Sequence record: NC_020851.1
Reading direction: 5' to 3' (one strand)
DNA length: 64,000 bases
A program made the position numbers and the translations under genes. Below are positions 2,589 to 11,832 of the stretch, piece after piece. The notes under the pieces are model-generated. The model did not search any database, had not been told where the DNA came from, and saw nothing but the letters and a program-made list of their open reading frames with translations. Every line of letters begins with the position of its first letter. Within the stretch, counting starts at the first letter, position 1.

Positions 2589-2906
2589 TCATGCAAGACG
2601 CATACCGTCAAAGAAAGGAATTGGAGAACCTTGATAATTAACGAACCACTGAAAGTTCTTTTGAAAAACATATTCACCGTCCATTCCGAAGGCAGAAAGT
2701 AAAGCATTCAAACGTGACTTTGTGGTCTTTGATTGTCTGCCACCGTCAAAGATTTGAATCCAGGTGTCACCAACGGTTGCGATTTTGTTTCCGTGGAGAT
2801 ACACATCAGAGGTGCCTTCCCAACCGGGGATAACAGTCGTATTGGCAGATGACCATCGTTCATCATTCTGAACTGCTGTGATCATCTGGGTTTCGATCTT
2901 ACGCAT
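2589..2906 (-). CDS. Conserved cyanophage hypothetical protein
   Basis: 105-aa ORF MRKIE...KTTKSRLNAL...FQKNFQWFV, preceded by a promoter repeat. Confidence 0.7.
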   Translation of the reverse strand: MRKIETQMITAVQNDERWSSANTTVIPGWEGTSDVYLHGNKIATVGDTWIQIFDGGRQSKTTKSRLNALLSAFGMDGEYVFQKNFQWFVNYQGSPIPFFDGMRLA

Positions 2907-3067
2907 GAGAGGCAGGTAGAAAGGTCTGAGAGGTGTGGTGAGGTGCTCCCCCCTCCACTTCTATAAGATACACGATTTTGGGGGTCTGTGCCGTTTTAGT
3001 GGACACTTTGGCCAACTGGCACAAGGTCGGCCGCTCTGAGTATCATTTAGTGATACTACAGTGAGTG

Positions 3068-3358
3068 TTACTTAGTCTCCACCATTTCCTGCTGATACTG
3101 CACAAGTTGCTCCTCTACGACTTCATCTACACAATCTTGAATCATTGTGTAGATGTAATCTATTTGCCCAACATCATCAAAGATACGTGCAATCAATGCA
3201 GGATCTTCTACGTTATTACCATAATCAGTGTTGCCATCTTCGTCCTTCAAATGACAATCATTCTTAGTATAAATCCATGCTGCACATTCTGCATCTTCTC
3301 CCTGTTCTTTGATCATACTGTTAACACGGTCCGCAAGTTGCTTGAGAGTGTAGTTCAT
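3068..3358 (-). CDS. Small acidic early protein
   Basis: 96-aa ORF bounded by repeats. Confidence 0.7.
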   Translation of the reverse strand: MNYTLKQLADRVNSMIKEQGEDAECAAWIYTKNDCHLKDEDGNTDYGNNVEDPALIARIFDDVGQIDYIYTMIQDCVDEVVEEQLVQYQQEMVETK

Positions 3359-3399
3359 AATTTGAATGAGAGAGTGTTAGATAGTGCAGTGAGTAAGTG

Positions 3400-3552
3400 T
3401 TACTCAGGACGAAGTTTGACTGTAATAATCTCAAAGTTTGGATGCAATTCTTTGCATCTTGCGTATGCTTCGGCAGCAGTTTCTCTCATGTAAGAGAGCA
3501 CATCGTGCATCTCTTTTTTGTTGTCGTAACCGTAGCAATTCCAGATAGGCAT
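3400..3552 (-). CDS. Small early protein (50 aa)
   Basis: Manual translation MPIWNCYGYDNKKEMHDVLSYMRETAAEAYARCKELHPNFEIITVKLRPE; fills the gap between two B repeats exactly. Confidence 0.7.
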   Translation of the reverse strand: MPIWNCYGYDNKKEMHDVLSYMRETAAEAYARCKELHPNFEIITVKLRPE

Positions 3553-3579
3553 GTGATTTAGTGGATGAATGAGTTAGTA

Positions 3580-3795
3580 TCAGTTACCGAAGAACTCATC
3601 GTGACAATCTGCCACGAAATCTATCAGTTCGTCGGTGCAATTAAGACCGAAACGATCGCATACGAAATCGACACACATTTCAAGTGGAGGCATCATCTCC
3701 AGCATGTAGTTTGCGAGGTCTGATGCAATCTCTTCCTTGAGACGGTTCATATCATTTTGCATGGCATAGGTGCAGGGGTCGGTGTAGGTTTGCAT
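3580..3795 (-). CDS. Small acidic early protein (71 aa)
   Basis: The real start is probably MQTYTDP at 3795; the longer ORF-track start runs through promoter repeat A. Confidence 0.7.
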   Translation of the reverse strand: MQTYTDPCTYAMQNDMNRLKEEIASDLANYMLEMMPPLEMCVDFVCDRFGLNCTDELIDFVADCHDEFFGN

Positions 3796-3929
3796 TTGGT
3801 GAATTCCTGATGACTTAACTACAATACACGATTTTGAGGTCTGTGCCGAAACCTTGTGCCACTTTGTCCGACTGTCCACTCGCGGCTGACCTGAGTATCA
3901 TTTAGTGGGGAGATTGCCTCCCCTAAGTG

Positions 3930-4103
3930 TTAATTAACGACTGTGAGTTCTACATTCTTTGCCATCCAAATCTGTTCGATGATATCATCAAGAGTGGCAA
4001 TCTGTTCATCGAAAGTATTATCTTTCGTAATAGAACTACACCTGATAAGTTCACCTCTACGGTCTACAAGTGCCATTCTTAAGTTAGTGCCAGAAATGTT
4101 CAT
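3930..4103 (-). CDS. Small early protein (57 aa)
   Basis: Manual translation MNISGTNLRMALVDRRGELIRCSSITKDNTFDEQIATLDDIIEQIWMAKNVELTVVN, immediately after a B repeat. Confidence 0.65.
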   Translation of the reverse strand: MNISGTNLRMALVDRRGELIRCSSITKDNTFDEQIATLDDIIEQIWMAKNVELTVVN

Positions 4104-4139
4104 TAAGTGTTAGTTAGTGAGTGAATGAGTAGGTGTTAC

Positions 4140-4418
4140 TTACATAATGTGCTCTAGAGCAACTTTACCATAAACTTCGTAGAAACAATCCCATGCCCAA
4201 ATATCATGCACGAAAGAATTGCAACCTTCTACCTGTTCAACAATCCAATCGTATGCCATATCTAAATCAGCATCCATTTCACCCACAAAATCATACAAAC
4301 CTTCCATTGCTGATTTGAAATTAGGGTCTTCCATTAGTGATAATGCTGTCTTGCCAGTCTCATTATCACGAATAATCATTTGACCTTCGATGTTGTATGC
4401 TTTGGAGAATTGAGGCAT
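4140..4418 (-). CDS. Small acidic early protein
   Basis: 92-aa ORF between B repeats. Confidence 0.7.
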   Translation of the reverse strand: MPQFSKAYNIEGQMIIRDNETGKTALSLMEDPNFKSAMEGLYDFVGEMDADLDMAYDWIVEQVEGCNSFVHDIWAWDCFYEVYGKVALEHIM

Positions 4419-4464
4419 TTTGTTAGTTAAAGAATGAATGAGTAAGTGTTAAACAGTGAGTAAA

Positions 4465-4623
4465 TCAGTCTCCCAATTCGATTACTGTATGCCCGAGGTA
4501 ATCTTCAACCCAGACAGTGGAATTAGACTCACTATACATCGAATAAGCAACATCGATGGCATGATCCTGAGAGGAGCAATTCTCAGTTTCGTTAAGTGCT
4601 GGACAGTGAACAGTGTAAAGCAA
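4465..4623 (-). CDS. Small early protein (probable TTG start)
   Basis: The coding part LYTVHCPALNETENC... lies downstream of promoter repeat A3; the ORF-track 5' extension is the repeat itself. Confidence 0.5.
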   Translation of the reverse strand: MLYTVHCPALNETENCSSQDHAIDVAYSMYSESNSTVWVEDYLGHTVIELGD

Positions 4624-4752
4624 AATTGAACTCGTTTCTTTGACCCTTCTACAATACACGATTTTGAGGTCTGTGCCGTGACCTTGTGACACTTTGTCCG
4701 ACTGTCTACTCGCGGCTGACCTGAGTATCATTTAGTGATACTACAGTGAGTG

Positions 4753-5025
4753 TTACTTAGTGAGAACTAATTCTTTGATCTCCAACTCATGCTCTACGCC
4801 AAACCTATCATTCAACTCATCATAAGTAGTTTTTTTGTATTCCCACTTCTTTGCAAGTTCTAAAAGACGAGGCATTTCCTTAACCTTCATCTCTTCAAGG
4901 TAATCCTCCGCTTCATTTAACGTAAGGAAAGTCTTAGTATGGTCTGAATCCAACATAGGAATTTCAAAGCTTTCATAATCATCGCATTCATACTGGATTT
5001 CGAAAACTAGATAAACTGAAGTCAT
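4753..5025 (-). CDS. Small acidic early protein
   Basis: 90-aa ORF between A repeats. Confidence 0.65.
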   Translation of the reverse strand: MTSVYLVFEIQYECDDYESFEIPMLDSDHTKTFLTLNEAEDYLEEMKVKEMPRLLELAKKWEYKKTTYDELNDRFGVEHELEIKELVLTK

Positions 5026-5140
5026 TGTTGTTCCTTTGGTAAATTCCTTTGACTCTTTAATAATACACTATTTTGAGGTCTGTGCCGTGACCTTGTGCCA
5101 CTTTGTCCAACTGTCTACTCGCGGCTGACCTGAGTGTTAC

Positions 5141-5290
5141 TTAGTAGTCTAATTTGCCGTTAATGTAACTTTCTACATCAAACTTCTTATCATCTTCTCC
5201 CTCTTCCTTATATTCAATCACATCATAAATCTCACCGGGCATATCATTAATCTCAGAGAAAATGTCAGTGTCGAAAGTGTCGTAATCCAT
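5141..5290 (-). CDS. Very acidic small early protein (49 aa)
   Basis: Manual translation MDYDTFDTDIFSEINDMPGEIYDVIEYKEEGEDDKKFDVESYINGKLDY. Confidence 0.7.
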   Translation of the reverse strand: MDYDTFDTDIFSEINDMPGEIYDVIEYKEEGEDDKKFDVESYINGKLDY

Positions 5291-5331
5291 TTTAAAAAAG
5301 TGTTAGTTAGTGAGAGTTGAGTAAGTGTTAC

Positions 5332-5529
5332 TTATGAATTCATATCAGTCCAAGTTTCTTCACCATAGCAATCGATAATCTCCCCTTTCAACTCATCCAT
5401 ATTGTAATCTTTGAGATTCTGTTCAATACTTTCAACCGCAAAAGTAATCAACGAATCCATATCCATTCCTTCTACAATCATCTCTGCATAAGCATTCTTC
5501 AGTTGATCGATTTGATTGAGAGTCATCAT
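5332..5529 (-). CDS. Small acidic early protein
   Basis: 65-aa ORF between B repeats. Confidence 0.7.
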   Translation of the reverse strand: MMTLNQIDQLKNAYAEMIVEGMDMDSLITFAVESIEQNLKDYNMDELKGEIIDCYGEETWTDMNS

Positions 5530-5571
5530 TTGAAAAAAAGTGTTAGTTAGTGTGAGTTGAGTAAGTGTTAC

Positions 5572-5721
5572 TTAAGCAAGAAGATTATCAATCACACGTT
5601 CAACATCTGCCGAAACTTCAATGCCTTGAGATTCACAATAATCAAGACACATTTGAAGGTCAGGTTGCATCTCCTCTACGAAATCATAGAGGGTTTCAAA
5701 TACAGTTTGAGAACAAGTCAT
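5572..5721 (-). CDS. Small acidic early protein (49 aa)
   Basis: Manual translation MTCSQTVFETLYDFVEEMQPDLQMCLDYCESQGIEVSADVERVIDNLLA, between B repeats. Confidence 0.7.
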   Translation of the reverse strand: MTCSQTVFETLYDFVEEMQPDLQMCLDYCESQGIEVSADVERVIDNLLA

Positions 5722-5755
5722 AATGTTAGTTAGTGAGTGAATGAGTAAGGGTTAC

Positions 5756-5995
5756 TTAGTCTATAAGTTCTTTCATCATTTCGTTTACTTCTATTCCGTT
5801 GATATTAACATCGTCCCACTTACAACTGTCTGGTGTTTCTTTACTTCCGGCATCGTGAATCATACTTACCAGATGTCCATAAGTTCCACCATCCCTTGCA
5901 ACATCACATGCCAGTTCATACAAACCAGGATCATTTCCGATCCAGAGAGCAACATTCCAGGTCTCCCAATTTGTCCAACCGTTGTAACCTTGCAT
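5756..5995 (-). CDS. Phage protein with YNGWTNWETWNV motif
   Basis: The N-terminal YNGW-T-N-x-E-T-W motif is common in small phage early proteins. Confidence 0.7.
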   Translation of the reverse strand: MQGYNGWTNWETWNVALWIGNDPGLYELACDVARDGGTYGHLVSMIHDAGSKETPDSCKWDDVNINGIEVNEMMKELID

Positions 5996-6087
5996 TTGGT
6001 GAATTCCTGATGACTTAACTACAATACACGATTTTGAGGTCTGTGCTCATTTATTGTGCCACTAATACTTTTGGCACATAGTATCAC

Positions 6088-6306
6088 TTACACAGTACGA
6101 ATCGTGATACTACACATTAACTCATGAGCAACATCGATAGAGTCATCTTCTCTCACAATTGGAAGATTAGTATCAACAAACTCCGAAGCAAGATCCATCA
6201 TTAACTCATGCATTCTTTCATCTCCTGCTGCAAACTCAGCAAACTCTTCAGAGAATCCGGATGCTAACCTACGAATTGCTTCGTCATGTACATTGAGAAC
6301 GGTCAT
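6088..6306 (-). CDS. Small acidic early protein
   Basis: 72-aa ORF after a B repeat. Confidence 0.65.
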   Translation of the reverse strand: MTVLNVHDEAIRRLASGFSEEFAEFAAGDERMHELMMDLASEFVDTNLPIVREDDSIDVAHELMCSITIRTV

Positions 6307-6346
6307 TTTGAAAAAAAGTGTTAGTTAGTGAACGAATGAATGAATG

Positions 6347-6511
6347 TTACTTAGCAGGGAAATTCTTACACACAGCATCACATAAAATCTTCACAAGTTC
6401 TTCATCATAATTGACATCATACTGTGCAAAGTAATCAGTGATGATACAATCAATGTCTTCCATCAATTGTTCACGACTAGTTAACATGTCAAGTGTGTCG
6501 TTGTTAATCAT
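6347..6511 (-). CDS. Small cyanophage early protein (54 aa)
   Basis: Manual translation MINNDTLDMLTSREQLMEDIDCIITDYFAQYDVNYDEELVKILCDAVCKNFPAK. Confidence 0.7.
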   Translation of the reverse strand: MINNDTLDMLTSREQLMEDIDCIITDYFAQYDVNYDEELVKILCDAVCKNFPAK

Positions 6512-6572
6512 TTTTAGGGTGAATTCCTGATGACTTAACTACAATACATGATTTTAGGGTCATGTGCTCATA

Positions 6573-6673
6573 TAGTGTGCCACTTCCCCGACTGTCACAC
6601 TCATAAGGTCTCTCTATGGGTCTTATAAGGTCTTCTAATGCCCTCTCGTGACAGTCGGGGAAGTGGCACACTA
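6573..6673. repeat. Perfect 26-bp inverted repeat with a 49-bp spacer
   Basis: TAGTGTGCCACTTCCCCGACTGTCAC (6573-6598) and GTGACAGTCGGGGAAGTGGCACACTA (6648-6673) are exact reverse complements. Confidence 0.95.
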
Positions 6674-6823
6674 ATACACGTCTACGGTCTCTCTGATGCT
6701 AATATCAACATTCTCGTCACCTTCCAGTCCTAAGATATCATTCCAATCAATATCTTTAAGATTTAAATCATCATAACACTCGATGTCTAATGTAACACTT
6801 ATGATGCGTTTGTGTGCGTACAT
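6671..6823 (-). CDS. Small acidic protein (50 aa)
   Basis: Manual translation MYAHKRIISVTLDIECYDDLNLKDIDWNDILGLEGDENVDISIRETVDVY. Confidence 0.6.
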   Translation of the reverse strand: MYAHKRIISVTLDIECYDDLNLKDIDWNDILGLEGDENVDISIRETVDVY

Positions 6824-6899
6824 GTGTATCTCGTATGATGTGTGTTATAATGTGTTATGTGTACACATATCTCGTAATGTATACATGTATCTCGTAACG

Positions 6900-7103
6900 T
6901 TATGCGTAATGTTTATACGCAAGCTCTACGTAATCACATGTATCTCGTGCGTACTCATCATCTATCTCGTATGTATCCTGGGTGTTATGTGTATCTCGTA
7001 GTGTATATGTATCTCGTGCATAATGCTCACACATCTCGTCTTTATAATACGTATAAGACTCGTTGTTATAATGATACTGTAACTCGTGGTCTTCGTAATA
7101 CAT
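6900..7103 (-). CDS. Tyr/Asp-rich low-complexity small protein
   Basis: 67-aa ORF in a region of repeated ATCTCGT motifs. Confidence 0.4.
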   Translation of the reverse strand: MYYEDHELQYHYNNESYTYYKDEMCEHYARDTYTLRDTHNTQDTYEIDDEYARDTCDYVELAYKHYA

Positions 7104-7250
7104 GGGTCTCGTCGAGATTTGTATGTTACTTGTATATTATACAGACATCTCGCACGTATGTCAAGTATGATCTCGTGCGGCATTCATAAGCATTATTTAT
7201 AAGTCTCGACGAGAAAAATGTGTGGGTCTCAGAGTTTTTATGCGGGGTGC

Positions 7251-7279
7251 TTGACAAAACTGCCGTCTTGTGGTAGAGT
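7251..7279 (+). promoter_or_regulatory. Near-consensus sigma70 promoter pointing into a non-coding repeat region
   Basis: TTGACA (7251)-17 bp-TAGAGT (7274) with extended -10 TG; opposite in orientation to the flanking genes. Confidence 0.7.
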
Positions 7280-7301
7280 GCGGGTAAAGGTCACAAGTCT
7301 C

Positions 7302-7405
7302 AGAAGGTTTATAAGAGTATTAGAGAAGGTTTATAAGAGTATTAGAGAAGGTTTATAAGAGTATTAGAGAAGGTTTATAAGAGTATTAGAGAAGGTTTAT
7401 AAGAG
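7302..7405 (+). repeat. Tandem 22-bp repeat, 4.7 copies (iteron-like)
   Basis: Unit AGAAGGTTTATAAGAGTATTAG begins at 7302, 7324, 7346, 7368 and 7390 (partial). Confidence 0.95.
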
Positions 7406-7406
7406 G

Positions 7407-7457
7407 TTTTCCACACATAAAAGACACTTATCCACAGAAATAACCCACTTATCCACA
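7407..7457 (+). promoter_or_regulatory. Three DnaA-box consensus sites in 21-bp phase
   Basis: TTTTCCACA 7407, TTATCCACA 7428 and TTATCCACA 7449 all match TTWTNCACA; an AT-rich tract follows at 7475-7520. Confidence 0.7.
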
Positions 7458-7592
7458 GACTTGTTGGAAAACAGTTTTATATTTATAATCATATTTAAAA
7501 CCTATTTTTTAACTCATAATGTAACAATCGATACAAAATACATAGTTTAGTCATGTAATCAATAGTATAAGGCATCTAGGAACACTTATGGG

Positions 7593-7784: not shown

Positions 7785-8470
7785 TTTTTATCACCAAATA
7801 GTTTGTTCATATAATCAAGCACATCATCATTAACAGTATCATTAATAGATGCATCTACTACATCATCAATAGCATTACCTGTCAATACACTCTTAGTTGC
7901 AGAAGCAGTAATTAGAAATGCCTTAAGTTTATCCTTCGTCTTATCTTCTTTCTTCTTTCTTTTTATGGCAACGATTTCATCAATACGACTTTGAATCTTT
8001 TCATTCAGAGTAGAATTAAATCCTACCTTTGACATATCATGCAATCTGAGGAATTCCTCAGATAAAGTTTCTCTCAGAAAGATTGGTGAATTGATATAAC
8101 AATCAATCAGATCATCAGGAAGATGAACATTCAAATATAATTTTGGATGACATGTGTTTTCATCATTCATATATAAAAACCCAGAACGATGAGTATCATA
8201 AATGGCACGAAGGATTTCTTCATCATCAGATGTTTTTGCCCATTCACCAATTATTGTTCTATCTTCTTTCCAAACATAAAGCAAACAAATAGGTCCTCGC
8301 CTCTTAGAATACTGTGCTTTCCATTCAGGAAGAGAATGTTCTTTATAAATTTCTGACGTAATTGTTGCTTCTTTAATAACATACAGAATTAATTCTTTTT
8401 CTGTTGCAAATAATGGGTCTGGGTCTGGAACTGAATTAGATTCGGTCTGATGAGAAAAGAAGTTAAACAT
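7781..8470 (-). CDS. Hypothetical protein (about 229 aa)
   Basis: Long ORF; probable start MFNFFSH at 8470, because the ORF-track start lies inside the promoter motif TATAAGGCATCTATGTGCCC. Confidence 0.6.
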   Translation of the reverse strand: MFNFFSHQTESNSVPDPDPLFATEKELILYVIKEATITSEIYKEHSLPEWKAQYSKRRGPICLLYVWKEDRTIIGEWAKTSDDEEILRAIYDTHRSGFLYMNDENTCHPKLYLNVHLPDDLIDCYINSPIFLRETLSEEFLRLHDMSKVGFNSTLNEKIQSRIDEIVAIKRKKKEDKTKDKLKAFLITASATKSVLTGNAIDDVVDASINDTVNDDVLDYMNKLFGDKK

Positions 8471-8534
8471 GTGTTTGTTTTGTATGTGATTATTATAGGG
8501 CATCTATGTGCCCTATGGTGGTTCAGTGGTCAGC

Positions 8535-8725: not shown

Positions 8726-8972
8726 AATTGAGGTTGTTTGGTATGTAATGAGTATAAGGCATCTATGTGCCCTGTGGAACGTTAGGTGGACAGTTTAGGG
8801 ATTGTCTAATTTTGATTTCGTATCAGTTGACTATCATTTTTTTTACAATACCATTAAGAAAAAATCCAACGATAAAAAAGAATATGACCGAAATTGGATC
8901 CATGATTGTTTGTTTGAACTGAAGTCATCATACAATAAAAACCACCCCTGTGAAAAGGTGGTGTGACAGTTC

Positions 8973-11832
8973 TTAATCTGTCTCATAGATACTCTTTCGA
9001 CTCTTTACATAAGTAAGATCCTTCCATTGATGCGGATAGCACAATAACAAAGTATGAATGAACTTATGTTTCTCCTCACGGGTATACTCACAGTTTGGTT
9101 TTGGTTTTACTCCTGTCTCAATCGTAATGTACAAACTATCAACAAAATAAACCCATCCTTCATGTATACTACCATTCTTATTCCATCTTACATAATCATT
9201 CACCTTTGGTTGATAAGTCATGAGAACAATAGTGCCTCTAATGGATTTAGGTTCTTTTGCATCGAACTATAAGGTGTCGTATCCTTAATAGAAACTTCCT
9301 TACCTACCTTCTTTGAATTAATCGGAGCATAATACTTTCCCTTCTTTGATGAATAAAATCCCCATATTGACTTAGGTGGTGTATTCCTATAAGAGAACAA
9401 TCCATGATTAATGATCCATATGGCATCATACCTTGCATTAAATGATTCAAATGAATAAGAAAAACCTTCGGGTGGTAGATGTGGGAAATCAATCATGATA
9501 CTTTGGTGATTTTAATTCTTTTGGGGTTAATACCATCATCTAATAAACTATTATAAATTTGCTCACATTCTTCCTTAGTAAGTGATGTTCTTACTTCGTG
9601 CCATCCTGATGTTGATTCCTCTTCAATTTTGTATAACGGAGTTTCCATACTATTCAGTAACCATTGCACTAATTATACCACATTCATAATCATCCGACAA
9701 CTTTAACTTGGATGCATTTGTAATCTCATTCATCAGTGCATCAGTATCACTCTCCTGAAACTTAATCTCAGGGTCTGCAATCACAAGAGAAAATGCTCTC
9801 ATATCATTCTCTGCAATTAATACAATTAACCCGGATAAAGACCAATGATCAATCAAATACACATACTTACTCATAAGAACTCCTTCATAAGATAATCAAC
9901 CGTAACTTCCATCTTGGCAGCAGTATTCTCTAAAAATTCATCTAATACTTCAGGAGCATCTTCCTTAACTACATGATACCATGAATACCATAACTCTGGA
10001 TTCGTCTGTGGTGTGACTTTAGAAAGATTGGTCAACATAAGATTCATAATTGAGTTCGACGTTTGTTGTGTCTAATGTAGCATAATAATCATACAACCGA
10101 TCATACAAGGTGTCAATACTACCTGATGATCGATTGATCTGTATCTCATCAATACTCTCCACTAATTCAAGTGCCTTGAGTATAATATCCAATTCATGTA
10201 CATTCAGTTCGATGTTAACTTCTGTCTTTTTCATTCATTATCTCCTTTAATTGCCATATGGTTTCTTTCATTGTAGCCCGTGCATAACCAGTCGCATAAG
10301 GATAACCTTTGTTTTTATCCTTACCAACATCATAACATACTTGAATTGCATCTTCAAGTCTTTCAATCATATGAGATACATTCATGAGTTTTCCTCCTGT
10401 TGTTCTTTCTTAAGTTTCTTGGCAAGTTTTGCAACCTTTCCCCATTCTTCAAAGTAAACAGCATCTGATAATTGTAAAAAGAGAGGGATTGGTTCTTTTG
10501 GTCCTCTCATTCCTTTCCACATTAGATCTCTAAATTCACCCATACCTCCTTCATCCTGTTGATCTAACCATCTAAGACATTCTTCCATTTGATCTCCACG
10601 ACCTTTGTCATATGCAGATCGTAGGTCATGAACGTCATATGAAGATCTGATGTTTTCAAAATTACACACCATCCCATTTGATCCTGAGTTGAATATATTG
10701 GGGTCTAGGCAATCTACAATTTTTTGGGGTTTCGTCTAGTCATCAGTTGTTCTCCTCGGTCACGTCTACCACTTCAGATTTATATTCAACGCGTCTTTTA
10801 GTGGACTCTTTGTTCCTCTCCCACCGGATAATATGTTGCAACCTGTGGCTGTAAGACATTGGGTCTTGTACAAAAAACTGCTCTATGGTCAGGTCAGCCA
10901 AGAGTTTTTCTGTTTCAGACCGTATCTCCTTTTCAAGTTGAAGGGTTAAATCTGTAACGACTACATCTGTAATTTTTTGTTTAATTAAATCTAGACATCT
11001 CTCAGTTGCTAAATCCAGAACAGAAAAAGTTTCTTGTGCCGATTGGTGTTGTTGATTAGTCATGATAATTCAATTGGTTGTGATTTGAAATACAGTCCGG
11101 CAATTTGCATCATATCAATTAACTTTGATTGTATCTCCTCTAATTGTTCTGCATCTACATTATCATCCCAAAAATCTACAATCTCAAACTCATCAAAGTT
11201 TAATACTAACTGGTCAAATGGAACACGGAATAATTCACCCTCACTACAAACCGTATACATGCAATCATGTTCCTCAACTGTTAAAAATACACCAGAAAAA
11301 GTTAAATCAGTCATTAGAAATCAAGAGCAAGTTGTTCAAATTCAAGATGGTCACAGCACGTATCATCATCGTGCAAATCAATCATGTCCGTGTCTGTGTG
11401 CTTAAAGAGTTTGTCAAACAAGTCATTCACGAACTCTTGATTCGATTGTTGTTGAGTCATAGTTCTGAAACAGTTTGGAATCACGTTGTGCTAAGAATAG
11501 CAAATAAACACTGAGAGCAAATGTAATACAAATGCCACTCAGCACATACTGAATTACTTTCATCAACCTACTGCCATAGGAGCATACTCTGAACGTGGCA
11601 TTTGATCTAGGTTGAAGTCAGTTACCACCGCACCATTCGCAATACGTGTGTCCCACTCATTACGTGCCGTCAGTGCCGTCACAGTTGAATAAGACTTGAG
11701 ACCATTCTTATTAAATGTGACACGTTTCTGAAAACGTTTGACTGTTACAATCATTCCTTTGTCTTCATCTGCCTCGGCAATGAATGCCTCAGGAAAGAAA
11801 TCAACCGTGGTGACGAGTGTGGTGAGTTGCAT
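8973..11832 (-). other. Run of small conserved or hypothetical cyanophage early ORFs (8973-9221, 9218-9496, 9650-9874, 10019-10234, 10382-10672, 10743-11063, 11060-11314, 11314-11460, 11563-11832)
   Basis: Tightly packed co-oriented ORFs with overlapping stop/start codons; no recognisable catalytic motifs. Confidence 0.65.

What the first reader, a model, noticed from the sequence alone, without database searches (positions are those of the whole stretch)
2969..6600. Cassette-like array: about 13 mini-genes, each framed by conserved repeats
Almost every ORF in this 3.6 kb is bounded by a B linker that begins with its stop codon inside a small hairpin (TAAGT-AAC-ACTTA) and ends at the next ATG. 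Every one to three genes there is a 80-115 bp A promoter repeat. This provides ready-made homologous crossover points for gene excision, insertion and reordering, like an integrase-free cassette array. It is reminiscent of the PeSL-mediated shuffling described in T4-type coliphage and Aeromonas phages, but has an additional translation-linker repeat. The cargo is small acidic proteins typical of host-takeover or anti-defence genes.
Basis: partly seen in the sequence, partly recalled or inferred. Interest (0 to 1): 0.75.

Follow-up and report, generated by a model that had tools for sequence, protein, structure and literature searches.

The report
Cyanophage gene-cassette array with adaptors
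In cyanophage S-SKS1, 13 tiny genes each sit between two standard kinds of spacer, and related wild phages carry the same genes added, lost or reordered at those spacers, which suggests how phages swap small genes without breaking their expression.

Summary
The window is the last 64 kb of Synechococcus phage S-SKS1, a T4-like cyanomyovirus. On the minus strand, window 6673-2906 holds 13 small genes framed by 6 A repeats and 8 B linkers. Neither repeat occurs elsewhere in the 208-kb genome.

A has an optional stem-loop, a 62-nt conserved core ending in a -10-like box, and a leader. B is a spacer of about 43 nt. It is nearly G-free, unstructured, lacks a Shine-Dalgarno motif, and usually has stops in all three frames.

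59 uncultured-phage loci carry the same repeats (176 A, 128 B). Among 21 complete arrays with about 95% identical flanks there are 17 gene arrangements of 4-13 genes. 93% of homology ends fall in the repeats. The left part of each repeat follows the upstream gene and the right part follows the downstream gene.

Best reading: a PeSL-like array of regulatory cassettes with a second, promoterless adaptor, a new variant of a known kind. Promoter activity, the translation role and the recombination pathway are inferred. The cargo is acidic and of unknown function.

Slip: my script printed a majority-base line for the repeats. I did not use it.

The parts
6503..6662 (-). A1 repeat, ahead of SWZG_00189. 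Its left part is one arm of a 26-bp perfect inverted repeat (6573-6598 / 6648-6673).
   Evidence: nhmmer E 6e-33. Inverted repeat. Fold -60 kcal/mol, z -9.1.
6347..6511 (-). SWZG_00189, 54 aa, acidic, phrog_2584, unknown function
6302..6360 (-). B1 linker
   Evidence: nhmmer E 7e-13. Unstructured.
6088..6306 (-). SWZG_00188, 72 aa, acidic, phrog_3298
5987..6110 (-). A2 repeat with two upstream hairpins
   Evidence: nhmmer E 9e-27. Fold -19.4 kcal/mol, z -3.6.
5756..5995 (-). SWZG_00187, 79 aa, DUF7249 / phrog_871. Confident four-helix model with no known fold match.
5717..5765 (-). B2 linker
   Evidence: nhmmer E 6e-11
5572..5721 (-). SWZG_00186, 49 aa, acidic. Distant relative of SWZG_00181 (hhalign probability 86%).
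5526..5582 (-). B3 linker
   Evidence: nhmmer E 2e-12. Fold -2.1 kcal/mol, z -0.3.
5332..5529 (-). SWZG_00185, 65 aa, DUF7326 / phrog_1352. A homologue lies next to the SWZG_00177 homologue in S-RIM14.
5286..5338 (-). B4 linker
   Evidence: nhmmer E 8e-13
5141..5290 (-). SWZG_00184, 49 aa, very acidic. Present in 43 ORF calls across the loci and always preceded by B.
5027..5170 (-). A3 repeat, without an upstream hairpin
   Evidence: nhmmer E 1e-32. Fold.
4753..5025 (-). SWZG_00183, 90 aa, acidic. A single-gene unit between A3 and A4.
4633..4764 (-). A4 repeat with a 7-bp hairpin
   Evidence: nhmmer E 1e-36. Fold.
4465..4623 (-). SWZG_00182 as I read it: 52 aa from TTG 4623. The record's ATG at 4731 lies inside repeat A4.
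   Evidence: Frame conserved in 14 loci; the alternative frame is not.
4414..4462 (-). B5 linker (diverged left block)
   Evidence: nhmmer E 5e-8
4140..4418 (-). SWZG_00181, 92 aa, acidic, phrog_714
4100..4147 (-). B6 linker
   Evidence: nhmmer E 2e-11
3930..4103 (-). SWZG_00180, 57 aa
3789..3941 (-). A5 repeat with a G+C-rich 6-bp hairpin
   Evidence: nhmmer E 1e-42. Fold.
3580..3795 (-). SWZG_00179, 71 aa, acidic, phrog_10297
3552..3593 (-). B7 linker (most diverged copy)
   Evidence: nhmmer E 2e-7
3400..3552 (-). SWZG_00178, 50 aa
3356..3410 (-). B8 linker
   Evidence: nhmmer E 8e-10
3068..3358 (-). SWZG_00177, 96 aa, very acidic, phrog_1255. 80-89% nucleotide identity to genes of several Kyanoviridae genera.
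2933..3075 (-). A6 repeat, ahead of the conserved flank gene. An A-like element lies at the same place in ACG-2014d and S-RIM14.
   Evidence: nhmmer E 1e-32. Cross-genus alignment.
2589..2906 (-). Downstream flank gene SWZG_00176, Kyano_Gp96 family (PF23790). Preceded by an A repeat in 36 of the 37 junctions upstream of it.
6671..6823 (-). Upstream flank gene SWZG_00190, 50 aa, phrog_12516. Followed by the first A repeat at all 30 junctions scored downstream of it (32 ORF calls of this family).

Best explanation
Window 6673-2906 (minus strand) is the hyperplastic small-gene region of the T4-like cyanomyovirus S-SKS1. It is organised as an array of exchangeable gene cassettes held between two kinds of standard intergenic adaptor.

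The A adaptor starts a transcription unit. It has an optional stem-loop after the previous stop codon, then a 62-nt conserved core that ends in a -10-like TAnnnT box (TATTGT in most S-SKS1 copies), then a leader of about 30 nt that often carries an AGGA motif.

The B adaptor joins genes inside a unit. It opens with a stop-codon doublet that can end the upstream gene in either of two frames. A second doublet follows, so that all three frames are usually closed. The rest is a nearly G-free, unstructured tract without a Shine-Dalgarno motif, ending at the next ATG.

Every gene therefore ends and starts in the same conserved blocks. Homologous recombination between non-allelic copies, or between co-infecting relatives, can delete, insert, replace or reorder whole genes and leave a complete expression signal at each junction. 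The phage's own T4-type machinery (UvsX, UvsY-like, gp46/47) could carry this out.

Shown: the repeats, their confinement to this locus, their wide occurrence in relatives, the diversity of arrangements, and the position of the junctions.

Inferred: that A is a sense promoter, that B drives Shine-Dalgarno-independent initiation (and may be a RegA operator), that recombination at the repeats is the cause of the diversity, and that the acidic cargo acts early against the host.
For: - Repeats in S-SKS1: 6 A and 8 B copies, all within 3.7 kb of a 208-kb genome.
- Relatives: 59 IMG/VR loci carry 176 A and 128 B copies, always interleaved and on one strand.
- Shared flanks: the arrays sit between the same two flank genes.
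- Arrangements: 21 complete arrays give 17 arrangements of 4-13 genes, while a 303-aa flank protein is 95% identical at the median. Two arrangements recur in three contigs each, from different metagenomes.
- Order changes as well as presence/absence: for example, the SWZG_00181-00180 pair lies before the 00179-00178-00177 unit in S-SKS1 but after homologues of 00178 and 00177 in L036.
- Homology ends: 319 of 344 (103 of 119 distinct positions) fall in repeats that make up 34% of the array, binomial p = 2e-32.
- A repeats, left part: 0.70-0.78 identical when the upstream gene is the same, 0.43-0.50 otherwise.
- A repeats, right part: 0.72-0.86 identical when the downstream gene is the same, 0.36-0.40 otherwise.
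- A repeats, core: 0.77-0.85 in all cases. The switch lies at model columns about 80-110. B behaves likewise.
- Register: about 75% of cores are full-length and in register.
- A clean loss: in L011 and L017 one gene is missing exactly between two copies of the short gene-end motif, leaving a B-A fusion.
- Gene plus upstream adaptor: most genes keep their own upstream adaptor type. The family of SWZG_00184 has B in 41 of 41 junctions and that of SWZG_00187 has A in 35 of 35.
- B properties: stops in all three frames in 60 of 81 spacers against 18% of shuffles; G 4.4% against 23.8% in coding sequence; SD motif in 1% against 31% of A leaders; unstructured.
- A as a regulatory element: the -10-like box and the 20 nt before it are 80-99% conserved across 130 unique copies. 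An A-like element sits ahead of the same Kyano_Gp96-family gene in two other genera.
- Recombination genes and a RegA homologue are present in S-SKS1.
- PeSLs with the same make-up and the same association with indels are documented in other T4-type phages.
Against: - No transcript or translation data exist for this phage.
- The consensus scan finds no sigma-70-type promoter in any A copy on the gene strand, because there is no acceptable -35. The complementary strand reads TACAAT with TTGnnn 17-18 nt upstream in five of the six S-SKS1 copies, so an antisense promoter is not excluded.
- The stem-loop is absent from many A copies (59% of left parts fold at <= -5 kcal/mol; mean z only -0.6).
- Nearly all non-coding DNA in the array is repeat (31% non-coding, 34% repeat). 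Selection against breaks inside genes would by itself put junctions in the repeats.
- Copies within one genome are no more alike than copies in different genomes (0.724 against 0.701 for A, 0.795 against 0.801 for B). There is no sign of frequent gene conversion between copies.
- Most relatives are metagenome assemblies, where repeats of this length can cause chimeras.
- The exact shared runs in B are short (13-17 nt).
Confidence: 0.7

Rival explanations
1. The repeats are only expression signals. A and B are conserved because every small early gene needs the same promoter or translation start. Gene gain and loss happen by ordinary illegitimate recombination or replication slippage anywhere, and selection keeps only events whose ends fall between genes. 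On this view the repeats are not the substrate of exchange.
For: - Non-coding DNA and repeat DNA coincide almost completely in the array.
- Copies within a genome are not homogenised.
- A-like and G-poor B-like spacers occur singly in other genera, where no array exists. This shows conservation for function alone.
Against: - About 75% of cores at junctions are full-length and in register.
- The switch between 'follows the upstream gene' and 'follows the downstream gene' lies inside the most conserved columns.
- The gene loss in L011 and L017 lies exactly between two copies of the same short motif.
- 17 arrangements exist among phages whose flanks are about 95% identical. That rate is much higher than in the neighbouring tightly packed small-gene cluster, which stays colinear in the same alignments.
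Confidence: 0.17
2. The conserved core of A is not a promoter for the genes downstream. It could instead be an antisense promoter (TACAAT on the plus strand), or a binding site for a phage or host protein such as a regulator or a replication or recombination factor. In that case the array is transcribed from the canonical promoter upstream at 7164-7136.
For: - There is no -35 match on the gene strand.
- The plus strand has TACAAT, or AATAAT in A3, with TTGnnn 17-18 nt upstream in five of the six copies; the scan itself scored A4 and A3, and A1, A2 and A5 are my reading of the sequence.
- The 40 nt upstream of the box are conserved far more than a normal promoter spacer.
- A perfect 12/12 sigma-70 consensus lies just upstream of the array.
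Against: - The plus-strand -35 would lie in the variable leader that changes with the downstream gene.
- The box keeps the TAnnnT form on the gene strand in diverged copies and in other genera (TATTGT, TATTAT, TATCTT, TATATT).
- The distance from the box to the ATG is a steady 30 nt or so.
- No conserved RNA structure exists on either strand that would suggest an antisense RNA gene. Rfam finds nothing.
Confidence: 0.1
3. The diversity of arrangements is an artefact. Short-read assemblers joined reads wrongly across the repeats, so the metagenomic contigs are chimeras of a few true arrangements.
For: - A copies share exact runs of up to 44 nt, and 84-102 nt at 87-100% identity. That is long enough to confuse short-read assembly.
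- Most arrangements are seen in a single contig.
Against: - S-SKS1 is an isolate genome and has three junctions not seen elsewhere.
- Two arrangements recur in three contigs each, from different samples. One of these contigs is 207.6 kb long.
- Loci differ in which gene families they hold, not only in order. Several families are absent from S-SKS1 altogether.
- Cultured phages of other genera show different neighbours for the same genes.
Confidence: 0.03

Closest known systems
PeSLs (promoter-early stem-loop cassettes) of T4-type phages: RB49/phi1, PST/T4, nt-1/KVP40 (PMC2839356, PMC4122927)
   Same: - Composite intergenic element: a stem-loop after the upstream gene, then a promoter-like box, a leader with an SD-like motif and the ATG.
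- Clustered in a hyperplastic region of small genes of unknown function.
- Closely related phages differ by whole-gene insertions, deletions, replacements and displacements whose ends lie in the elements.
- No dedicated recombinase is present.
   Different: - The host and lineage are new. The S-PM2 study (PMC4503421) states that such a density of PeSLs is not seen in that cyanophage.
- The A core has no recognisable -35, and its 62 nt are far more conserved than a promoter needs.
- The stem-loop is optional.
- A second, promoterless adaptor (B) frames 8 of the 13 genes and has no counterpart in the PeSL papers I read.
- Excised circles, shown for RB49/phi1, have not been looked for here.
Integron gene-cassette arrays (attC sites, IntI integrase, Pc promoter)
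   Same: A one-directional array of short, mostly promoterless genes, each bounded by a recognisable repeat. Content and order vary between close relatives, between fixed flanks.
   Different: - No integrase gene is present in or near the array.
- B is unstructured, whereas attC sites work as folded single-stranded hairpins.
- There are several internal promoter-like elements instead of one Pc.
- Exchange is presumably by general homologous recombination.
RegA translational operators of T4 and RB69 (PMC3014915)
   Same: B is unstructured, poor in G, lies immediately 5' of the AUG, and carries several UAA triplets that include the upstream stop codon. RB69 RegA selects UAA triplets, and the review notes that an upstream UAA may add to recognition. 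S-SKS1 encodes a clear RegA homologue (PF01818, E 1e-44).
   Different: Known RegA sites are A+U-rich with little sequence conservation. B is C-rich (28% C) and highly conserved. No binding data exist, so this is a lead and not a finding.
[quoted passage not shown]
   Same: The same kind of region and partly the same gene families: phrog and DUF families shared with Kyanoviridae. SWZG_00177 is 80-89% identical in DNA to genes of S-RIM14, S-RIM12 and ACG-2014d/e/j.
   Different: In ACG-2014d and S-RIM14 only 1-3 A-like copies and a few weak B-like copies occur in 12-14 kb. The S-SKS1 lineage has 3-7 A and 1-8 B copies within 1.5-3.7 kb.

Membership tests
PeSL (promoter-early stem-loop) cassettes | Located in a hyperplastic region of small variable genes between conserved modules | tested here: met
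   The array lies between baseplate genes and a block of small genes and a DNA methylase. Its flanks are conserved in relatives while its content varies.
PeSL (promoter-early stem-loop) cassettes | Stem-loop just upstream of the promoter | tested here: inconclusive
   Present in 5 of 6 S-SKS1 copies, but only A1 and A2 beat shuffles. 59% of left parts in the family fold at <= -5 kcal/mol, with mean z -0.6. One stem pair changes G-C to A-T between copies. No run of T follows the stem.
PeSL (promoter-early stem-loop) cassettes | Sigma-70-like early promoter with -35 and -10 boxes about 17 nt apart | tested here: inconclusive
   The -10-like TAnnnT box is conserved at >= 90%. No copy passes the two-hexamer scan on the gene strand. 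Activity was not measured.
PeSL (promoter-early stem-loop) cassettes | Shine-Dalgarno sequence and start codon at the 3' end | tested here: met
   AGGA lies 9-10 nt before the ATG in A1, A2 and A5 and 17 nt before it in A3. 31% of A leaders in the family carry an SD motif, against 1% of B leaders.
PeSL (promoter-early stem-loop) cassettes | Indels, replacements and displacements between close relatives end in the elements | tested here: met
   17 arrangements in 21 arrays. 93% of homology ends lie in repeats. The left and right parts of each repeat follow their neighbouring genes.
PeSL (promoter-early stem-loop) cassettes | Excised circular cassettes detectable during infection | not testable with these tools
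   This needs sequence data from infected cells or virions, and none is available here.
Integron cassette array | Tyrosine-recombinase integrase (IntI) next to the array | tested here: not met
   No such gene appears among the annotated or called ORFs within 10 kb, and there are no Pfam hits of that kind among the array and flank proteins.
Integron cassette array | attC sites: imperfect inverted repeats that fold as hairpins | tested here: not met
   B is unstructured and shows no covariation. The A core has no conserved structure on either strand.
RegA operator | Unstructured site at or just 5' of the AUG of an early gene, in a phage that encodes RegA | tested here: met
   B folds no better than shuffles. 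It ends at the ATG. RegA homologue: PF01818, E 1e-44.
RegA operator | Binding and repression by RegA | not testable with these tools
   No binding or expression data exist. The likeness to the UAA-triplet ligands of RB69 RegA comes from the literature.

The most novel reading that the evidence does not exclude
S-SKS1-like cyanomyoviruses may run a recombinase-free 'plug-and-play' cassette system with two standard adaptors. One adaptor brings a promoter. The other is a G-free linker that stops all three frames and restarts translation, so that any small gene can be placed behind any other gene, in any frame, and still be expressed. The same linker would double as the operator through which the phage's RegA shuts off the whole set together. 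The cassettes would also be exchanged between cyanophage genera: SWZG_00177 is 80-89% identical in DNA to genes of Kyanoviridae whose core genes are far more diverged.
Probability: 0.35. Interest if true: 0.8.

Novelty: new variant of a known kind. Interest (0 to 1): 0.62.

Why it matters
Hyperplastic regions hold most of the unknown genes of T4-like phages. How they turn over so fast is only partly understood.

This locus offers a natural series: one isolate plus at least 16 other arrangements between nearly identical flanks. In this series, gene gain, loss, replacement and reordering can be read junction by junction.

It extends the PeSL idea to marine cyanophages, which are among the most abundant viruses in the sea.

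It also adds a second, promoterless adaptor whose properties are simple enough to test by expression data alone: stops in all frames, almost no G, no Shine-Dalgarno motif.

Finally, it marks out a compact set of acidic early proteins that are candidates for host-directed functions.

Tried and rejected
Rejected. There is no stability beyond shuffles and no compensatory changes.
- **Structured RNA in the A core.** RNAalifold on 86 unique copies gives no structure on either strand. An Rfam E-value scan gives only a chance match (mir-8489, 29.9 bits against a gathering score of 99) on the large inverted repeat.
- **Array of paralogues from tandem duplication.** Rejected. hhalign across 24 families links only one pair, SWZG_00186 with SWZG_00181, at probability 86%.
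- **Concerted evolution of the repeats within a genome.** Not seen.
- **Function of the cargo.** Pfam and PHROGs give only families of unknown function. PDB sequence searches of two proteins give nothing. A confident AlphaFold model of SWZG_00187 (pLDDT 94) has no PDB match with E < 1, and matches only uncharacterised cyanophage proteins in BFVD.
- **Literature on cyanophage early promoters.** The search gave nothing usable.
- **A wasted call.** One search_dna_similar call repeated an earlier one in 'spread' mode and added little.
- **ORF-calling artefacts.** My ATG-only ORF caller took the wrong frame for SWZG_00182 and fused some ORFs through an A repeat, giving apparent 'A B' neighbours. 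I corrected this by eye. It does not affect the repeat-based counts.

Full report
**What the window is.** The window matches Synechococcus phage S-SKS1 (NC_020851/HQ633071, genus Llyrvirus, host WH7803) at 100% identity. It corresponds to record positions 144008-208007. The record encodes T4-type head, sheath, baseplate and replication genes. These include UvsX, a UvsY-like protein, gp46/47 homologues, endonuclease VII and a translational repressor. I confirmed the repressor as a RegA family member (PF01818, E 1e-44). The genes of the finding lie on the minus strand.

**Checking the observation.**
- Reading the minus strand and the repeat finder show two repeat families.
- Profiles built from the copies (alignments) and run over the whole 208-kb genome find 6 A copies (E 1e-42 to 9e-27) and 8 B copies (E 7e-13 to 2e-7).
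- All copies lie between window 6662 and 2933 on the same strand. Nothing else in the genome scores below E 0.1.
- Thirteen genes (SWZG_00177-00189) lie between the first and last A.
- They form five units: A1-[00189, 00188], A2-[00187, 00186, 00185, 00184], A3-[00183], A4-[00182, 00181, 00180] and A5-[00179, 00178, 00177].
- A6 precedes the conserved flank gene 00176 (Kyano_Gp96 family).
- For SWZG_00182 the annotated ATG (4731) lies inside repeat A4. The frame is conserved in 14 loci, but the likely start is TTG at 4623, giving 52 aa.

**Anatomy of A.** Across 130 unique copies, conservation (as the share identical to the real A5 copy) is 80-99% over the TATTGT box and the roughly 20 nt before it. 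It is 60-90% over the 40 nt further upstream. The part nearest the upstream gene is present in only 10-70% of copies.
- The box keeps the TAnnnT form in diverged copies (TATTAT in A3, TATCTT in A6).
- About 30 nt separate the box from the ATG. 31% of A leaders carry an SD-like motif.
- No A copy passes a two-hexamer sigma-70 scan on the gene strand, so there is no acceptable -35.
- The complementary strand reads TACAAT, or AATAAT in A3, with TTGnnn 17-18 nt upstream in five of the six S-SKS1 copies. The scan scored two of them (A4, A3) and I read the other three from the sequence. An antisense promoter is therefore a minor rival.
- The core has no conserved RNA structure on either strand, and Rfam has no true match.
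- Stem-loops after the upstream stop codon occur in five of six S-SKS1 copies. A1 has a 26-bp perfect inverted repeat (-60 kcal/mol, z -9.1). A2 has two hairpins (z -3.6). A4-A6 have 6-7-bp stems that do not stand out from shuffles. A3 has none.
- In the family, 59% of left parts fold at -5 kcal/mol or better.

**Anatomy of B.** The median spacer from stop to ATG is 43 nt.
- In the S-SKS1 copies B opens with a TAAGTAAC doublet. Genes use either its first TAA (40 spacers) or its second (21) as their stop.
- A second doublet (CTAACTAAC in copy B3) follows about 20 nt later.
- As a result, 60 of 81 unique spacers close all three frames, against 18% of shuffles.
- G makes up 4.4% of B, against 23.8% of the coding sequence. 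An SD motif occurs in 1%.
- B folds at -0.2 to -2.1 kcal/mol, no better than shuffles.
- B is therefore a sequence-conserved, unstructured linker and not a hairpin.

**Relatives.** Exact-pattern scans of IMG/VR with a stretch of the A core and with the two B blocks returned 68 loci. 59 of them carry profile matches: 176 A and 128 B copies, always interleaved and always on one strand.
- I called ORFs and clustered them. Most arrays sit between the same flank genes as in S-SKS1.
- Among the 21 arrays with both flanks there are 17 arrangements of 4-13 genes, and S-SKS1 ties for the largest.
- Two arrangements recur in three contigs each, from different samples. One of these contigs is 207.6 kb long.
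- The 303-aa flank protein is 95% identical to S-SKS1 at the median, so these are close relatives.
- The differences include presence/absence, replacement, duplication of a family within an array, and changes of order.

**Where the junctions are.**
- In blastn of the S-SKS1 array against all loci, 319 of 344 homology ends (103 of 119 distinct positions) lie in the repeats. The repeats occupy 34% of the array (p = 2e-32).
- This is partly forced, because 31% of the array is non-coding and nearly all of that is repeat.
- The finer test is more telling. For A, the part left of the core is 0.70-0.78 identical between copies that share the upstream gene and 0.43-0.50 otherwise.
- The part right of the core is 0.72-0.86 identical between copies that share the downstream gene and 0.36-0.40 otherwise.
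- The core is 0.77-0.85 identical in every class. By column, the switch lies at model columns about 80-110, the best conserved stretch.
- B behaves the same way, with the switch near columns 25-36.
- About 75% of cores are full-length and in register.
- In L011 and L017 the homologue of SWZG_00177 is missing exactly between two copies of the short gene-end motif, leaving a B fused to an A.
- Against L013, S-SKS1 lacks two genes, with a 15-nt overlap of homology at the same motif.
- Most genes keep their own upstream adaptor type (B in 41 of 41 junctions for the family of SWZG_00184, A in 35 of 35 for that of SWZG_00187), while the downstream type changes with the next gene. The unit of exchange therefore looks like adaptor plus gene.
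- Copies within a genome are not more alike than copies between genomes. The conservation reflects function or shared descent, not ongoing homogenisation.

**Other genera.**
- ACG-2014d (Lowelvirus) and S-RIM14 (Ahtivirus) each have an A-like element directly ahead of their Kyano_Gp96-family gene. That protein is 57-63% identical to SWZG_00176.
- A is therefore an old regulatory element of cyanomyoviruses that has multiplied in the S-SKS1 lineage.
- S-RIM14 also has G-poor spacers of the B kind. It places the homologues of SWZG_00185 and SWZG_00177 side by side, unlike S-SKS1.
- SWZG_00177 is 80-89% identical in DNA to genes of several Kyanoviridae, while a helicase gene reaches only 73%. This points to exchange between genera.

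**Cargo.**
- Eleven of the thirteen proteins have pI <= 4.6, and ten of these carry net charges of -8 to -15. My caller took the wrong frame for SWZG_00182; the corrected 52-aa product is also rich in acidic residues by eye.
- All matched families are of unknown function. Only one pair is related.
- SWZG_00187 (DUF7249) gives a confident four-helix model with no known structural relative.
- 'Host takeover or anti-defence' therefore remains a guess.

**Comparison with what is known.**
- PeSLs of RB49/phi1, PST/T4 and nt-1/KVP40 are composite elements made of a stem-loop, an early promoter, an SD and an ATG. They cluster in hyperplastic regions and border indels.
- A fits this description, except for the missing -35 and the optional stem-loop.
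- The S-PM2 study states that such density is not seen in that cyanophage. I found no description of this array in 35 papers that mention S-SKS1 (titles and abstracts only).
- B has no counterpart in the PeSL papers.
- Its likeness to RegA operators comes from the review's account of RB69 RegA ligands and is a lead only.
- Integrons share the array logic, but their defining integrase and folded attC sites are absent.

**Verdict.** It is a new variant of a known kind: a PeSL-like array in marine cyanomyoviruses with a second, promoterless adaptor. Confidence in the combined explanation is 0.7, and interest is 0.62.

Noticed in passing
window 6828-7176 (+): Nine of the window's twelve ATCTCGT heptamers cluster in 350 bp just upstream of the array, all on one strand and partly at 20-22-bp spacing. 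This is an iteron-like zone that could be an origin or a regulatory region. Relatives align through much of it (out to window ~7260-7580) in single HSPs that average 87-92% identity.
   Followed up: partly
window 7302-7405 and 7410-7457: A perfect 22-bp tandem repeat (4.7 copies) is followed by a 21-bp repeat (2.3 copies) in a non-coding stretch.
   Followed up: no
window 7164-7136 (-): A 12/12 match to TTGACA-17-TATAAT points towards the array, inside the iteron-like zone. It is a candidate early promoter for the whole leftward block.
   Followed up: no
window 4465-4731 (-): The annotated start of SWZG_00182 lies inside repeat A4. Conservation of the frame in 14 loci suggests a TTG start at 4623 (52 aa).
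   Followed up: yes
window 8470-8518, 8729-8777 and 8927-8962 (-): A different family of composite elements lies ahead of small hydrophobic ORFs: a G+C-rich hairpin followed at once by a -10-like box and a G-poor leader. One element is a clear hairpin plus T-run terminator followed by a promoter-like box. These are also PeSL-like, but unrelated in sequence to A.
   Followed up: partly
window 2906-2975 (-); L073 9255-9317; L074 2630-2700: The long leader between A6 and the Kyano_Gp96-family gene is conserved across three genera. It contains a purine run that could pair with a CCTC-rich stretch downstream, so it may be a regulatory 5' UTR. Rfam has no match.
   Followed up: no
window 3068-3358 (-): SWZG_00177 is 80-89% identical in DNA to genes of S-RIM14, S-RIM12, S-CAM8, S-MbCM6 and ACG-2014d/e/j. 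A core helicase gene reaches only about 73% to the nearest other phage. This suggests recent exchange of this cassette between genera.
   Followed up: partly
L002 23387-27764 (S-SKS1 record, outside the window): Two photosystem II D1 genes are annotated 2.2 kb apart, with transaldolase, an HNH endonuclease and an endonuclease VII gene between them.
   Followed up: no
window 8973-11800 (-): The neighbouring cluster of small genes uses a different style: overlapping stop and start codons with no spacers or repeats. It stays colinear in the relatives that could be aligned.
   Followed up: no
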